A DNA stretch of 63,194 bases, filler included, from Octopus bimaculoides (GCF_001194135.2; 5 parts of 5 records of this genome joined end to end with filler, not necessarily neighbours in it); one strand, 5' to 3'. Shown: positions 3,518 to 28,465, counted from the first letter of the whole stretch. The notes: generated by a model not told the origin, from the sequence alone. Translations and numbers: made by a program.

Positions 3518-3803
3518 TCAGCCATCGTGATCCCATGGTGGACACTGATTGGACGAGAGATTCATTGAGGTCATGCGGGCGTAGAGGGCATCTCCGCCAC
3601 TCCCGCTGACATCTTCAGCCATTATCCCCGCCTTCAGCGGGAACTTCAGCGTCACGTCCAGATGCTCATTGTGTTCGGACAGCGACGTCTTCTGGTAGTG
3701 TAACACCAGCTCCAGTAGCGACGGATGAATAATGTATGGCTCGGCAAAGCCATAGTTGCCGTTTTTCCGCAGGATTTTACAATGGCCTATCACTTTTTCA
3801 TGT
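3518..3803 (-). CDS. PIK3R1-like: p85 terminal coding exon: cSH2 second half plus C-terminal tail ending at TGA
   Basis: Acceptor gaaacag|ACATGAAAAAGTG (phase 2). Encodes [94 protein letters not shown]. The acceptor has a weak pyrimidine tract. Confidence 0.93.
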
Positions 3804-28335: not shown

Positions 28336-28465
28336 GGAATTGCCAATAAAAAAAAACTTACCACACATTCATCAGGAGGTGACACATGAGGAGCCTGTTC
28401 TCGGCTACAAACTGCTTTTTCTATCACACCGTTCTGACAGCTTAAGTGACAACAATGTCCACAGC
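3518..28465 (-). CDS. PIK3R1-like: Class IA PI3K regulatory subunit (p85-like), partial multi-exon model: join(28362-28465,27408-27542,25989-26069,24651-24711,23662-23778,22497-22595,22043-22153,20613-20690,[missing],16285-16403,15788-15857,13718-13881,12717-12897,10379-10504,9681-9799,[missing],6607-6672,6012-6173,3518-3803)
   Basis: Hand-spliced exons with GT-AG boundaries and matching phases give [29 protein letters not shown] (nSH2), iSH2 [22 protein letters not shown], and cSH2 DGTFLIR...YGFAEPY...[26 protein letters not shown]. These are clearly homologous to p85alpha. Confidence 0.95.
3935..4740 (-). mobile_element. Head-to-tail stack of about 4 tRNA-derived SINEs (family 1, (TTA)n tail)
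   Basis: Repeated core catcgacccc...aaggatgaaaggcaaagtcgacctc.gcggaatttgaactc (reverse of the B-box-like GAGTTCAAATTCC), with copies separated by TAA runs. Confidence 0.9.
4842..5190 (-). mobile_element. RTE-associated short retroelement / LINE 3' end with (GAT)n tail
   Basis: catcatcatcgtttaacgtcc...ggatgcccttcct..gccaaccact. Related copies lie at about 12115-12405, 19290-19520, 20745-20850 and 26880-27045. Confidence 0.7.
5582..5990 (+). mobile_element. CORE-type SINE (family 2) with internal TA microsatellite
   Basis: cactgcgtggcaccttgagcaagtgtcttc core, an internal TA tract, then the gtaacttagcggtt...aagtactagg...aaacaagtaaaaga tail. Confidence 0.85.
6012..6173 (-). CDS. PIK3R1-like: p85 exon: start of cSH2
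   Basis: ctttgcag|T...TCTATTGT|gtgagt, 162 nt, phase 2-2. Encodes [53 protein letters not shown]. Confidence 0.95.
6607..6672 (-). CDS. PIK3R1-like: p85 exon: end of iSH2
   Basis: cattacag|A...GAAAA|gtaagt, 66 nt, phase 2-2. Encodes [21 protein letters not shown], which aligns with human WLTQKGVRQKKLNEWLG. Confidence 0.85.
6723..6815. repeat. 31-bp purine tandem repeat, about 3 copies
   Basis: agaaagatagagaaagggcaaaagagaagag repeated. Confidence 0.85.
6950..7670 (-). mobile_element. Helitron RepHel helicase (PIF1-like) fragment, degraded
   Basis: [13 protein letters not shown] (Walker A-like), [11 protein letters not shown] (Walker B), [17 protein letters not shown] and WLVQLGNG motifs across frameshifts and stops. 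Confidence 0.88.
9108..9500 (-). mobile_element. tRNA-derived SINE family 3, two tandem partial copies
   Basis: gttgtttatggaagaccagca...ccactgatgttatccaagggaaagg occurs twice. The same family is at about 11410-11740 and 23238-23560. Confidence 0.8.
9681..9799 (-). CDS. PIK3R1-like: p85 exon: iSH2 helix 1
   Basis: cttttgcag|GAG...CAAAA|gtaagc, 119 nt, phase 0-2. Encodes [39 protein letters not shown]. Confidence 0.95.
10105..10345 (+). repeat. Purine-only GGA/GAA low-complexity tract
   Basis: About 230 nt almost entirely A/G, with recurring gaaggggaggaagatgaa units. Confidence 0.9.
10379..10504 (-). CDS. PIK3R1-like: p85 exon: start of iSH2 (126 nt, phase 0-0)
   Basis: aaccag|TAT...TCACAG|gtaaaa. 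Encodes [42 protein letters not shown], 42 aa, colinear with human DQVVKEDN...YDRLYEEYTRTSQ. Confidence 0.92.
10871..11310 (+). mobile_element. SINE family 1, two copies
   Basis: aaggtggagagctggcagaatcgttagc head, gagttcaaattcc B-box, and ATT tail. Confidence 0.85.
11410..11740 (-). mobile_element. SINE family 3, near full length
   Basis: The reverse strand reads gaaggcacatgggtcagtggttatagtg...gttcgattccc (A/B boxes). Confidence 0.8.
12115..12405 (+). mobile_element. RTE-associated element with (GAT)n tail
   Basis: Reverse complement of the 4842-5190 element, ending ggacgttaaacgatgatggtgatgatg. Confidence 0.75.
12717..12897 (-). CDS. PIK3R1-like: p85 exon: nSH2 second half
   Basis: atttgcag|G...GGTCCG|gtacgt, 181 nt, phase 2-0. 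Encodes [60 protein letters not shown]. Confidence 0.96.
13354..13582. mobile_element. piggyBac-like MITE, degraded
   Basis: Homologous along its length to 55086-55305. Ends caacactttagcattt and atggtaaaggg are degenerate versions of the TIRs. Confidence 0.55.
13718..13881 (-). CDS. PIK3R1-like: p85 exon: nSH2 FLVR motif, interrupted by a 74-N gap (13751-13824)
   Basis: atattccag|A, then [18 protein letters not shown](GA), then NNN, then (C)[10 protein letters not shown](AG)|gtaagc. Confidence 0.93.
13925..15670 (-). mobile_element. Stack of about 7 SINE family 1 copies (with the Dong-like insertion inside)
   Basis: Repeated core as at 3935-4740, separated by TAA/CAA runs. Confidence 0.88.
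14557..14818 (+). mobile_element. 5'-truncated Dong/R4-like RLE non-LTR retrotransposon in a (TAA)n tract
   Basis: Encodes [49 protein letters not shown], followed by a short 3'UTR. (AAT)n lies on both sides. Confidence 0.85.
15788..15857 (-). CDS. PIK3R1-like: p85 exon: linker plus start of nSH2
   Basis: ccattgtag|AT...TCAAG|gttagt, 70 nt, phase 1-2. Encodes [22 protein letters not shown]. Confidence 0.94.
16285..16403 (-). CDS. PIK3R1-like: p85 exon: end of RhoGAP/BH domain plus proline-rich motif
   Basis: cattttttatag|A...CCCA|gtaagt, 119 nt, phase 2-1. Encodes [39 protein letters not shown]. Confidence 0.88.
16660..17113 (-). mobile_element. SINE family 1 variant, two tandem copies
   Basis: ttcttatttctttattgcc.acaa...ggacagacaaag.gattaagtc...gcaaag.cgacctc duplicated. 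Confidence 0.85.
17933..18245 (+). mobile_element. CORE-type SINE family 2 (3' two-thirds)
   Basis: ctatagcctcgggccgaccaaagccttgtgagtggatttggtagacgg...aaacaagtaaaagag. Confidence 0.88.
18610..18790 (-). mobile_element. Penelope-like GIY-YIG endonuclease fragment
   Basis: Encodes [36 protein letters not shown], matching the Y.GET.R.L..R..EH...S.IA.H pattern. Confidence 0.75.
19560..19800 (-). mobile_element. RTE-clade LINE C-terminal fragment
   Basis: Encodes [34 protein letters not shown], the same motif as in 45606-46170. Confidence 0.7.
20613..20690 (-). CDS. PIK3R1-like: p85 exon: RhoGAP arginine-finger segment
   Basis: gttttgcag|AG...TCTG|gtaagt, 78 nt, phase 1-1. Encodes [25 protein letters not shown]. 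Confidence 0.88.
20899..21117. mobile_element. Mariner-family MITE (about 220 bp)
   Basis: Ends ta-caagagcaatgctgaaaagttcc and aaagccagagtcttttcaccacccactca-ta are imperfect inverted repeats resembling the 51886-53114 TIRs. Confidence 0.55.
21269..21459. mobile_element. Hairpin MITE with about 70-bp inverted arms, embedded in a TA microsatellite
   Basis: ctatttgccaacataatgtggcag.cctggatgggac...tgtttag.cccag versus ctggggctaaacag...gtcccatccaggactgccacattatgttggcaaatag. Confidence 0.85.
22043..22153 (-). CDS. PIK3R1-like: p85 exon: start of RhoGAP
   Basis: aactctag|AT...CACA|gtaagt, 111 nt, phase 1-1. Encodes [36 protein letters not shown] (FGVDL and P.V...C...IE motifs). Confidence 0.92.
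22200..22410 (-). mobile_element. SINE family 1, full length, low divergence
   Basis: Complete head, core and tail. Confidence 0.9.
22497..22595 (-). CDS. PIK3R1-like: p85 exon: C-terminal half of C1 domain b plus linker
   Basis: aaatgtag|TG...CAAA|gtaagt, 99 nt, phase 1-1. Encodes [32 protein letters not shown]. Confidence 0.93.
22780..23100 (+). mobile_element. CORE-type SINE family 2
   Basis: ggctgtgtggtaagaagcttgcttcccaaccacatgg...ggcaccttgggtaagtg. Confidence 0.85.
23238..23560 (+). mobile_element. SINE family 3
   Basis: gaaggcacatggctcagtggttaaagc head, then gtattcttgagcaag core. Confidence 0.85.
23662..23778 (-). CDS. PIK3R1-like: p85 exon: N-terminal half of C1 domain b
   Basis: catctttcag|AT...CGAG|gtaggt, 117 nt, phase 1-1. 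Encodes [38 protein letters not shown]. Confidence 0.94.
24194..24467. mobile_element. hAT (Charlie-type) MITE with intact 8-bp TSD
   Basis: TIRs cagtggttctcaa / ttgagaaacactg. The TSD GACTAAAC is at 24186-24193 and 24468-24475. Confidence 0.92.
24651..24711 (-). CDS. PIK3R1-like: p85 small linker exon (SAM-C1)
   Basis: gatatacag|CGC...TGTG|gtaagt, 61 nt, phase 0-1. Encodes [20 protein letters not shown] and supplies exactly the phase change needed between its neighbours. Confidence 0.8.
25350..25960 (-). mobile_element. SINE family 1 cluster (3-4 partial copies)
   Basis: Repeated core motif. Confidence 0.8.
25989..26069 (-). CDS. PIK3R1-like: p85 exon: SAM domain second part
   Basis: cgtttacag|GAG...GACCAG|gtgagt, 81 nt, phase 0-0. 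Encodes [27 protein letters not shown] (MGI...H...I..L SAM signature). Confidence 0.92.
26350..26830 (-). mobile_element. Old CR1/L2/Jockey-group LINE reverse transcriptase fragment
   Basis: The minus strand reads [18 protein letters not shown] (compare the RT motif GVPQGSVLSP.LF), preceded by a degenerate KAFD.VWH-like segment. Confidence 0.55.
27045..27181. mobile_element. hAT MITE right end
   Basis: ttgagaaccactg followed by ctctagag, a Charlie-type target site. Confidence 0.6.
27408..27542 (-). CDS. PIK3R1-like: p85 exon: SAM domain first part
   Basis: tttgtttcag|AGT...TTGATG|gtttgt, 135 nt, phase 0-0. Encodes [45 protein letters not shown]. Confidence 0.93.

What the first reader, a model, noticed from the sequence alone, without database searches (positions are those of the whole stretch)
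3518..28465. PI3K p85-type subunit with a non-vertebrate C1-SAM-C1-RhoGAP-SH2-iSH2-SH2 architecture
Seen: phase-consistent exons place two C1 zinc-finger segments and a SAM domain in frame upstream of the RhoGAP/SH2 core. Established: vertebrate p85alpha/beta have SH3-BH-SH2-iSH2-SH2 and Drosophila p60 has only the SH2 core. I recall extra SAM/C1 domains being noted in some invertebrate p85 homologues, so the SAM/C1 addition may not be wholly new; the second C1 may be less well described. Inference: this adaptor could couple DAG/lipid sensing and SAM oligomerisation to PI3K recruitment.
Basis: partly seen in the sequence, partly recalled or inferred. Interest (0 to 1): 0.75.

Follow-up and report, generated by a model that had tools for sequence, protein, structure and literature searches.

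The report
Ordinary invertebrate-type PI3K p85 gene
The region holds most of an ordinary gene for the p85 adaptor subunit of PI 3-kinase in its long invertebrate form (SH3-C1-SAM-C1-RhoGAP-SH2-iSH2-SH2), a layout already annotated from choanoflagellates to echinoderms, so it is the old form that vertebrates trimmed, not a new one.

Summary
The exons are real. On the minus strand, 17 coding exons run from 28465 to the stop codon at 3518. One of them is cut in two by an N gap. Every boundary that can be read is a canonical AG/GT site, and no exon has an internal stop. Pfam finds SAM, one complete C1, two SH2 domains and the p85 inter-SH2 domain in the spliced product.

The gene is incomplete here:
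- The "first C1" is only the last 4 of its 8 zinc ligands.
- Its first part and an SH3 exon lie beyond the read sequence.
- Two RhoGAP exons and one iSH2 exon are hidden in N gaps.
- The 74-N gap sits inside an nSH2 exon.

Full-length orthologues share SH3-C1-SAM-C1-RhoGAP-SH2-iSH2-SH2. They come from a clam, a tick and an annelid, plus an intron-free transcript contig from a public sequencing run. Pfam also shows most or all of this set (C1, SAM, RhoGAP and two SH2 in each) in a crinoid, Hydra, a mosquito and a choanoflagellate. A 2025 shrimp paper already notes the two C1 domains and the SAM domain.

So the architecture is ancestral, widespread and already annotated. DAG sensing is doubtful, because each C1 lacks one consensus ligand-binding residue. 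Interest is low.

The parts
28362..28465 (-). Exon holding the last third of the first C1 domain (C1a): (x)[20 protein letters not shown]...PPDECV. It has only 4 of the 8 zinc ligands. Acceptor in phase 1, donor in phase 0.
   Evidence: splice sites TTGTAG| and |GTAAGT. One search aligns it to the C-terminal part of C1a of Mya, Owenia, tick and the Logan orthologue. One search shows the same exon in Lottia (EGCGKCYHNIC...).
27408..27542 (-). SAM domain exon 1 ([45 protein letters not shown]).
   Evidence: tblastn to Mya 6e-16. Pfam SAM_1 3.8e-13 over both SAM exons; coordinates.
25989..26069 (-). SAM domain exon 2 ([27 protein letters not shown]).
24651..24711 (-). 61-nt linker exon ([20 protein letters not shown] + 1 base). 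It restores the reading phase between SAM and C1b.
   Evidence: ATACAG| and |GTAAGT; phase 0 in, phase 1 out. One search aligns it to the orthologues' linker (xYxSSLPxxx...). One search shows the matching Lottia exon QPYAARLPPVISIDMEA.
23662..23778 (-). C1b exon 1 ([39 protein letters not shown]).
   Evidence: E down to 7e-14; Pfam C1_1 2.5e-10.
22497..22595 (-). C1b exon 2 ((V)[17 protein letters not shown]...RRGSFTQ). The intron interrupts the domain at the same point and phase as the intron before the C1a tail exon.
22043..22153 (-). RhoGAP/BH domain exon 1 ((N)[36 protein letters not shown]).
   Evidence: E about 3e-8 to mollusc orthologues..
20613..20690 (-). RhoGAP/BH exon 2 ((K)[25 protein letters not shown]). 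It carries the candidate arginine finger (YRIS).
   Evidence: One search aligns the orthologous stretch to GLYRVSG of chimaerin.
17114..17932 (.). N gap that most likely hides the two central RhoGAP exons (about 118 aa, ...VAGALKKYLRELPNPVIPVEMY...HVFCHILLRPPWEKII).
   Evidence: no match anywhere in the read sequence; the flanking exons have incompatible phases. Lottia has two exons here.
16285..16403 (-). Last RhoGAP exon plus the proline-rich motif ([39 protein letters not shown]).
15788..15857 (-). nSH2 exon 1 ((N)[22 protein letters not shown]). It lies only 427 nt downstream of the RhoGAP-end exon and is phase-matched to it.
13718..13881 (-). nSH2 exon 2, interrupted by the N gap 13751-13824. 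It reads (R)[20 protein letters not shown][N][11 protein letters not shown](R) and contains the FLVR phosphotyrosine-binding arginine.
12717..12897 (-). nSH2 exon 3 ([60 protein letters not shown]).
   Evidence: (1.6e-22).
10379..10504 (-). iSH2 exon 1 ([42 protein letters not shown]).
   Evidence: (PF16454 1.8e-18).
9681..9799 (-). iSH2 exon 2 ([39 protein letters not shown]).
8331..8927 (.). N gap that most likely hides one iSH2 exon of about 64 aa (...LISEMNSLKPEIKRL...).
   Evidence: no match in the read sequence. (Lottia exon for residues 192-255 of P0007).
6607..6672 (-). Short exon at the end of the iSH2 region ([21 protein letters not shown]).
   Evidence: (1e-5 to Physella). One search shows the Lottia equivalent.
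6012..6173 (-). cSH2 exon 1 ((N)[53 protein letters not shown]).
3518..3803 (-). Last exon: second half of cSH2, the C-terminal tail and the TGA stop ((V)[23 protein letters not shown]...PWDHDG*).
   Evidence: (1e-17).

Best explanation
The minus strand of 3518-28465 carries most of the single gene for the class IA PI 3-kinase regulatory subunit (p85, the PIK3R family) of a lophotrochozoan, most likely a mollusc. It is the long, ancestral form: SH3 - C1 - SAM - C1 - RhoGAP/BH - Pro-rich - nSH2 - iSH2 coiled coil - cSH2. The window starts inside the first C1. The SH3 exon and the first part of C1a lie beyond the read sequence, and three internal exons are lost in N gaps.

How it works (inferred from the family; nothing functional was measured here):
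- The iSH2 coiled coil holds and restrains a p110 catalytic subunit.
- The two SH2 domains, both of which keep the FLVR/FLIR arginine, dock on pYxxM motifs of activated receptors and adaptors. This brings the kinase to the membrane and relieves the inhibition.
- The N-terminal SH3, Pro-rich and BH parts are regulatory and scaffolding modules, as in vertebrate p85.
- The C1-SAM-C1 insert is an extra, functionally uncharacterised regulatory module. Its SAM is most like polymer- or partner-forming SAMs (DGK-delta, liprin, Shank, CNK).
- Both C1 domains keep all zinc ligands that can be seen, but each lacks one residue of the phorbol-ester/DAG consensus. I therefore expect protein or general membrane contacts rather than classical high-affinity DAG sensing.

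Shorter isoforms from internal promoters, lacking SH3-C1-SAM, probably exist as they do in the orthologues.
For: Gene structure: 17 exons with canonical splice sites, matching phases and no internal stop.

Domains: Pfam SH2 x2, PF16454 iSH2, SAM_1/SAM_2 and C1_1 on the spliced model.

Orthologues: the best matches are mollusc, annelid and tick proteins named PI3K regulatory subunit, carrying C1 + RhoGAP + SH2 + iSH2. Their long isoforms (Mya XP_052775386, Ornithodoros XP_064476403, Owenia CAH1775218, Logan P0134) show SH3, two C1, SAM, RhoGAP, two SH2 and iSH2 by Pfam; in the Mya protein Pfam does not reach the SH3.

Single transcript: contig SRR34486205_6991 (L001) encodes the whole 968-aa protein in one uninterrupted ORF at 94-3000. 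That means a single mRNA.

Lottia locus: same strand, same order and the same exon boundaries, including the linker exon.

N-terminus: the SH3 of the orthologues matches p85-alpha SH3 structures (1pht, 1pnj, E about 1e-8).

Spread: my own domain models find SAM and/or C1 in front of RhoGAP in 57 of the 150 best cluster representatives. The taxa include a choanoflagellate, Hydra, a crinoid, a brachiopod, trematodes, bees, flies and a mosquito, and Pfam confirms four of them.

Published note for shrimp: PMC12817958.

C1 residues. SAM relatives.
Against: - There is no transcript evidence from this organism. No cephalopod or otherwise near-identical protein was in the searched collections; the best identity was 57-64%.
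- The reading frame cannot be followed across three gaps.
- RhoGAP is not independently significant in the window model.
- The SH3 and the first part of C1a were not found, so the full architecture is inferred from orthologues for those parts.
- The old Lottia annotation splits the locus into two models.
- The functional statements about C1 and SAM rest on consensus residues and similarity only.
Confidence: 0.9

Rival explanations
1. There are two adjacent genes. An upstream gene encodes SH3-C1-SAM-C1-RhoGAP (a chimaerin-like GAP). A separate short p55/p60-type gene encodes only SH2-iSH2-SH2.
For: The Lottia gigantea annotation has exactly these two models, 350 bp apart on the same strand. Short isoforms that begin after the SAM or after the first C1 are annotated in Mya, Physella, Owenia and the tick. 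The RhoGAP domain of the orthologues is closer to chimaerin than to vertebrate p85 BH in the PDB.
Against: RefSeq and GenBank long isoforms join all the domains. An intron-free transcript contig encodes all of them in one ORF. In the window the RhoGAP-end exon (donor phase 1) and nSH2 exon 1 (acceptor phase 1) are 427 nt apart and splice in frame, with no start or stop codon needed. The nSH2 exon 1 translation has no Met, so the short gene would have no start there.
Confidence: 0.05
2. The scaffold is mis-joined at the N gaps, so pieces of different loci (or of paralogues) have been strung together and only look like one gene.
For: There are five N gaps inside the span and three expected exons are missing. 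The 74-N gap is nominally out of frame.
Against: All 17 exons are on one strand in exactly the order and with the boundaries of the Lottia locus. No exon is duplicated. The flanks of the 74-N gap are the two halves of one exon, with about 3 nt missing.
Confidence: 0.03
3. It is a decaying pseudogene copy of p85. The missing exons were truly deleted rather than left unread.
For: About 180 conserved residues (RhoGAP core and iSH2 middle) are absent from the read sequence. The introns are full of repeats and hold a Helitron-type PIF1 fragment.
Against: There are no stop codons or frameshifts in about 2 kb of exon sequence, and every readable splice site is canonical. Conservation to orthologues is strong at functional motifs (FLVR, zinc ligands). 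Each missing segment coincides with an N gap.
Confidence: 0.02

Closest known systems
Long-form invertebrate p85 / PI3K regulatory subunit. Examples: Mya arenaria XP_052775386.1, Ornithodoros turicata XP_064476403.1, Owenia fusiformis CAH1775218.1, and Penaeus vannamei PI3Kp85-alpha as described in PMC12817958.
   Same: Same domain order for everything present in the window: C1a tail, SAM, linker, C1b, RhoGAP, Pro-rich, nSH2, iSH2, cSH2. Identity is 52% to Mya over the N-terminal module and 57% over the best local alignment of the core. The exon boundaries are the same as in the Lottia locus.
   Different: Nothing architectural. The window lacks the SH3 and the first part of C1a (outside the read sequence) and three internal exons (N gaps). 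The octopus-like sequence has Phe at C1b position 22, where the mollusc orthologues have Tyr.
Vertebrate p85-alpha / p85-beta (PIK3R1 / PIK3R2): SH3-PR1-BH-PR2-nSH2-iSH2-cSH2.
   Same: SH2-iSH2-SH2 core (tblastn 2e-19 for nSH2 exon 3 against a p85-alpha sequence written from memory). Also a BH/RhoGAP domain before a proline-rich motif, and, in the orthologues, a p85-type SH3 at the N-terminus.
   Different: Vertebrates have no C1-SAM-C1 between the SH3 and the BH domain. Their BH domain is more diverged: the orthologues' RhoGAP scores 58 bits against p85-alpha BH but 90 bits against beta2-chimaerin.
Chimaerins (SH2-C1-RhoGAP Rac-GAPs; PDB 1xa6, 3cxl).
   Same: A C1 domain directly followed by a RhoGAP domain. 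They are the best PDB match of the orthologous RhoGAP domain (1.7e-24) and a good match of C1b. The arginine of the YR(V/I)S motif is kept.
   Different: In chimaerins the SH2 is N-terminal and single, and there is no iSH2, SAM or SH3. The chimaerin C1 is a typical DAG receptor with Pro11. In the p85 proteins the Asn of the chimaerin NLGIVFGP motif is replaced (DKLSHVFCH).
Short regulatory subunits (Drosophila p60, vertebrate p55/p50, C. elegans AAP-1).
   Same: The nSH2-iSH2-cSH2 core, which is sufficient for binding p110.
   Different: They lack the whole N-terminal half. In this locus the N-terminal exons are spliced in frame to the core. Short isoforms may exist in addition.

Membership tests
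Class IA PI3K regulatory subunit (p85 / PIK3R) | Two SH2 domains flanking the p85 inter-SH2 coiled coil (Pfam PF16454) | tested here: met
   SH2 6.6e-32 with two stretches, and PF16454 1.8e-18 (profile positions 17-86 only). The middle iSH2 exon is hidden in gap 8331-8927.
Class IA PI3K regulatory subunit (p85 / PIK3R) | Phosphotyrosine-binding arginine (FLVR motif) in both SH2 domains | tested here: met
   nSH2 has GTFLVR (13881..13825) and cSH2 has GTFLIR (6173..6012).
Class IA PI3K regulatory subunit (p85 / PIK3R) | BH/RhoGAP-like domain followed by a proline-rich motif upstream of nSH2 (long p85 forms) | tested here: inconclusive
   Only the first two exons and the last exon are in the read sequence. 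They match the orthologues' RhoGAP ends at 1e-8 to 1e-5 and are followed by PPPIPKRP. Pfam RhoGAP is not significant on the window model. The core lies in gap 17114-17932.
Class IA PI3K regulatory subunit (p85 / PIK3R) | N-terminal SH3 domain (long p85 forms) | tested here: not met
   No SH3-coding exon was found in 28466-31179. The orthologues have one. In Lottia it lies 7.3 kb upstream of C1a, so here it is probably outside the window. This is a limit of the window, not evidence of absence from the gene.
Class IA PI3K regulatory subunit (p85 / PIK3R) | Binds and regulates a p110 catalytic subunit | not testable with these tools
   Needs co-immunoprecipitation or a kinase assay.
Typical (DAG / phorbol-ester-binding) C1 domain | Zinc-ligand pattern H-x12-C-x2-C-x13/14-C-x2-C-x4-H-x2-C-x7-C | tested here: met
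   C1b is [50 protein letters not shown], ungapped against PKC C1B. Of C1a only C-x4-H-x2-C-x9-C is in the window. The orthologues' C1a has the full pattern.
Typical (DAG / phorbol-ester-binding) C1 domain | Consensus ligand-groove residues Pro11, Gly23 and Gln27. Their importance is established knowledge from PKC-delta C1B mutagenesis, recalled and not re-checked here. | tested here: not met
   In C1b, Pro11 is Met (Met, Leu or Ala in the orthologues), while Gly23, Gln27 and Gly28 are kept. In C1a of the orthologues, Pro11 and mostly Trp22-Gly23 are kept, but position 27 is Phe, Val, Cys or Lys.
Typical (DAG / phorbol-ester-binding) C1 domain | Measured DAG or phorbol-ester binding | not testable with these tools
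   Needs a PDBu-binding or membrane-translocation assay.
SAM domain | Match to the SAM profiles over the full domain length | tested here: met
   SAM_1 3.8e-13 (profile 2-63 of 64) and SAM_2 1.7e-11; the closest solved SAMs are DGK-delta (3bq7), liprin-beta1, Shank and CNK2.
SAM domain | Self-association or polymer formation | not testable with these tools
   Needs SEC-MALS, AUC or EM of the isolated domain.
Catalytically active RhoGAP | Arginine finger plus the conserved Lys and Asn of the catalytic core | tested here: inconclusive
   The candidate Arg is present in the window (VYRISA, 20690..20613). In the orthologues the Lys of ALKKYLRELP is kept, but the Asn of the chimaerin NLGIVFGP motif is Lys. 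The core exons of this gene are unread.

The most novel reading that the evidence does not exclude
The ancestral p85 may have been more than an SH2 adaptor. The conserved C1-SAM-C1 block and the chimaerin-like, arginine-finger-bearing RhoGAP domain are kept from choanoflagellates to echinoderms. Together they could make it a lipid-gated, SAM-assembling Rac/Cdc42 (or Rab) GAP built into the PI3K holoenzyme. Vertebrates, Drosophila and nematodes would then have lost this function. My evidence excludes none of this, and none of it has been tested experimentally in the literature I could search.
Probability: 0.15. Interest if true: 0.55.

Novelty: new member of a known kind. Interest (0 to 1): 0.2.

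Why it matters
For this window, very little: it is the expected orthologue of a well-known signalling gene, broken up by assembly gaps.

The wider point is modest but real. The textbook p85 layout (SH3-BH-SH2-iSH2-SH2) is a reduced form. The layout with C1-SAM-C1 is shared by choanoflagellates, cnidarians, lophotrochozoans, arthropods, flatworms and an echinoderm. In the open literature I searched, it is mentioned only in passing in one shrimp virology paper. What the extra module does is unknown and could be tested with ordinary biochemistry.

Practically, the locus shows how gaps and old gene models (Lottia) split this gene. Annotators should expect an SH3 exon and the rest of C1a further upstream.

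Tried and rejected
I used spliced models instead.
I used an alignment of six returned orthologues instead.
- The first word-index search with the N-terminal model returned a single partial snail protein. This was a sensitivity limit, not absence, as searches showed.
- I looked for the missing RhoGAP core and iSH2 middle on both strands with relaxed tblastn. Nothing was found. I also inspected the three frames of 16430-20600 by eye and saw nothing.
- I looked for the first part of C1a and the SH3 in 28466-31179 by tblastn and by regular expressions. 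Nothing was found. A 'CKYC' next to gap 29289-29984 has no His or Pro in register and a stop 12 codons upstream, so I rejected it as chance.
- I first thought the SAM2-to-C1b phase mismatch might mean two genes. I rejected this once the 61-nt linker exon was found.
- Five literature searches for an evolutionary description of this architecture found only the shrimp paper. A 2006 RhoGAP phylogeny paper gave nothing on a p85-chimaerin relationship.
- An ORF at 18603-18785 that looked to me like a GIY-YIG/Penelope fragment has no Pfam match.
- I ran no structure prediction. It could not settle lipid binding or oligomerisation.

Full report
**What is in the window.** The piece is 31,179 bases, 38% G+C, with eight runs of N. 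All the coding signal of the finding is on the minus strand. Reading the candidate exons base by base gives 17 exons between 28465 and 3518, and one of them is cut in two by an N gap. Every boundary that can be read is a canonical AG acceptor or GT donor, and no exon has an internal stop. The finding's limits are exactly the first base of the first exon and the last base of the TGA stop.

**The N-terminal block.** Eight exons join into one open frame of 786 nt:
- C1a tail, 28465..28362
- SAM exon 1, 27542..27408
- SAM exon 2, 26069..25989
- linker, 24711..24651
- C1b exon 1, 23778..23662
- C1b exon 2, 22595..22497
- RhoGAP exon 1, 22153..22043
- RhoGAP exon 2, 20690..20613

The 61-nt linker exon is essential. 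SAM exon 2 ends in phase 0 and C1b exon 1 starts in phase 1, so they cannot be joined directly. The linker (ATACAG|CGC...TGTG|GTAAGT) enters in phase 0 and leaves in phase 1, and it encodes [20 protein letters not shown]. This aligns with the linker of the orthologues and with a separate Lottia exon.

**Domains.** On the spliced model Pfam finds the following:
- SH2, twice (6.6e-32)
- the p85 inter-SH2 domain PF16454 (1.8e-18)
- SAM_1 (3.8e-13) and SAM_2
- one C1 (2.5e-10)

The upstream 'C1' is not detected, because the exon holds only the last 4 of the 8 zinc ligands (C-x4-H-x2-C-x9-C). RhoGAP is not detected, because only the two ends of that domain are present.

**The gaps.**
- 13751-13824 lies inside the second nSH2 exon. 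The upstream flank ends ...GGA ACC TTT TTG GTT CGG GA, and the downstream flank begins C TCT ACG CAT GGT GAC..., which is [11 protein letters not shown]. With 74 N the two sides are out of frame. Mollusc orthologues read [17 protein letters not shown], so only about 3 nt are really unread, and the flanks fit one exon.
- 17114-17932 sits between RhoGAP exon 2 (donor phase 1) and the RhoGAP-end exon at 16403..16285 (acceptor phase 2). These cannot be spliced to each other. About 118 very conserved residues in between (VAGALKKYLRELPNPVIPVEMY...HVFCHILLRPPWEKII) match nothing in the read sequence on either strand. Lottia has two exons there.
- 8331-8927 sits where one iSH2 exon of about 64 residues is missing.
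- 5740-5749 and 14856-14865 are intronic.

The gene is therefore readable as four in-frame blocks, not as one verified frame.

**What it is.** The core matches proteins named PI3K regulatory subunit. The best matches are molluscs (Mya, Physella, Babylonia, Lottia), an annelid (Owenia) and a tick. Apart from the short Lottia model, these carry a C1 in front of RhoGAP, SH2 and iSH2. Cluster members include their long isoforms: Mya arenaria XP_052775386 (1020 aa), Ornithodoros turicata XP_064476403 (940 aa), Owenia CAH1775218 (959 aa), and a 968-aa protein from a Logan assembly. Pfam gives all four the same set: two C1, SAM, RhoGAP, two SH2 and iSH2. It also gives SH3 for all but Mya, whose N-terminus still reads like an SH3 by eye.

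The Logan contig (SRR34486205_6991, 4,698 nt) carries the whole protein in one uninterrupted ORF, 94-3000. It is therefore a transcript, and it shows that all these domains sit on one mRNA. The N-terminal SH3 of the orthologues matches solved p85-alpha SH3 structures.

The full architecture is thus SH3-C1-SAM-C1-RhoGAP-SH2-iSH2-SH2. The window begins in the last third of the first C1 (alignment). I could not find the SH3 or the first part of C1a in 28466-31179. In Lottia those parts are two tiny exons plus an SH3 exon 7.3 kb upstream. Here they are most likely in gap 29289-29984 or beyond the edge of the piece.

**One gene or two?** In the old Lottia annotation the locus is two models on the same strand, 350 bp apart: SH3-C1-SAM-C1-RhoGAP, then SH2-iSH2-SH2. 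That is the only support for the 'separate gene' reading. Against it stand the long RefSeq isoforms, the transcript contig, and the window itself. The RhoGAP-end exon and the first nSH2 exon are 427 nt apart, both in phase 1, and the nSH2 exon has no start codon. Exon boundaries in Lottia and in the window coincide one for one, which also argues against a scaffold mis-join. Shorter isoforms that start after the SAM or after C1a are annotated in several species and may exist here too.

**How widespread is it?** A profile of six long orthologues, searched against 1.84 billion cluster representatives, gave 428 hits below 1e-30. I built my own domain models from that alignment. With them, 57 of the best 150 representatives carry SAM and/or C1 in front of RhoGAP, almost all of them with SH2 domains too. 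The named ones include:
- the crinoid Anneissia japonica
- Hydra vulgaris
- the choanoflagellate Salpingoeca infusionum
- the brachiopod Lingula
- annelids
- trematodes and Schistosoma
- a mantis shrimp
- bees (Hylaeus)
- flies (Megaselia, Condylostylus, Eupeodes) and the mosquito Anopheles dirus

Pfam confirms the choanoflagellate, Hydra, crinoid and mosquito proteins. The architecture is therefore ancestral to animals plus choanoflagellates, and the vertebrate, Drosophila and nematode forms are reductions. That last step is my inference from the distribution. In the searchable literature only one paper mentions it. [quoted passage not shown] Four other searches found nothing more.

**How it most likely works.**
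- Shown here: intact FLVR and FLIR motifs in the two SH2 domains, the parts of the iSH2 that can be read, and a PPPIPKRP motif between BH and nSH2.
- Inferred from the family: the iSH2 binds p110, the SH2 domains dock on pYxxM sites, and the N-terminal half regulates.
- For the extra module the evidence is indirect. C1b aligns without gaps to PKC C1B domains and keeps Gly23, Gln27 and Gly28. However, it has Met where typical C1 domains have Pro11, and Phe at position 22. This holds across the orthologues (Met, Leu or Ala at 11).
- C1a of the orthologues keeps Pro11 and mostly Trp22-Gly23, but has Phe, Val, Cys or Lys at position 27 instead of Gln. Those three residues are the classical requirement for phorbol-ester and DAG binding (recalled from PKC-delta C1B work, not re-checked here). 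I therefore predict weak or no classical DAG binding, and some other membrane or protein contact instead.
- The SAM is closest to the DGK-delta, liprin-beta, Shank, neurabin and CNK SAMs. Several of these self-associate or pair with partner SAMs, so oligomerisation is plausible but untested.

**A side observation.** The RhoGAP domain of the long-form orthologues is nearer to beta2-chimaerin (90 bits, 1.7e-24) than to vertebrate p85-alpha BH (58 bits). Like chimaerin, it is directly preceded by a C1. The Arg of the YR(V/I)S motif and the Lys of ALKxY are kept, but the Asn of the chimaerin NLGIVFGP motif is Lys. Whether the domain is an active GAP cannot be decided here.

**Verdict.** The identification as p85 with extra C1 and SAM domains is right. 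The architecture is longer than stated, because it has an SH3 in front. It is old and widely annotated, not new. The DAG-sensing idea is doubtful. This is an ordinary orthologue of low interest. The only open question is what the conserved C1-SAM-C1 module does.

Noticed in passing
window 7164-7613 (minus strand): A 150-codon open stretch matches the PIF1-like helicase family (PF05970, 1e-26). It is most likely a Helitron-type transposon fragment, sitting in the intron between the iSH2 exons.
   Followed up: partly
window, at least 22 places, e.g. 4120-4321, 10861-11076, 13983-14390, 14918-15668, 16937-17094, 22200-22420, 25795-25965, 27861-28313, 28701-28838: An interspersed (SINE-like) repeat of about 220 bp, 75-86% identical between copies and often in back-to-back clusters, fills the introns in both orientations. 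It produces the recurring pseudo-peptide ...[20 protein letters not shown]... in ORF lists.
   Followed up: partly
window 416-1700, 2100-2560, 20120-20480, 21090-21950; also 12630-12700: Long TA/CA-type microsatellite tracts read as IYIYIY / HTHTHT in translation. A (CT)n tract lies directly after the donor of nSH2 exon 3. Several N gaps abut such tracts, which probably explains the assembly breaks.
   Followed up: no
orthologues P0124 etc., not the window (the core of the domain is unread here): The RhoGAP domain of long-form p85 is closer to beta2-chimaerin and n-chimaerin (90 and 78 bits) than to vertebrate p85-alpha BH (58 bits). Like chimaerin, it is immediately preceded by a C1. This may point to a shared C1-RhoGAP cassette, or only to faster divergence of the vertebrate BH domain.
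   Followed up: partly
L002 (Lottia gigantea KB200521.1, 639001-681978): genes at 10001-32978 and 33328-40286: The Lottia annotation splits the orthologous locus into two models (LOTGIDRAFT_157404 and LOTGIDRAFT_230612) only 350 bp apart on the same strand. This is very likely one gene that has been mis-annotated.
   Followed up: yes
window 28465..28362 versus 22595..22497 (minus strand): Both C1 domains are interrupted by a phase-1 intron at the same point, between the fifth and sixth zinc ligands (C-x-|x-C). This fits an old tandem duplication of the C1 unit.
   Followed up: partly
window 18603-18785 (minus strand): A 61-codon open stretch ([37 protein letters not shown]...) reminded me of a GIY-YIG / Penelope-like element, but it has no Pfam match at E<0.1. 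It remains unexplained.
   Followed up: partly
window 9681 / 6672 (minus strand): The exons flanking the missing iSH2 exon are both in phase 2, so skipping that exon would keep the reading frame. The missing exon is therefore symmetric, and its absence from a transcript would not be revealed by a frameshift.
   Followed up: no
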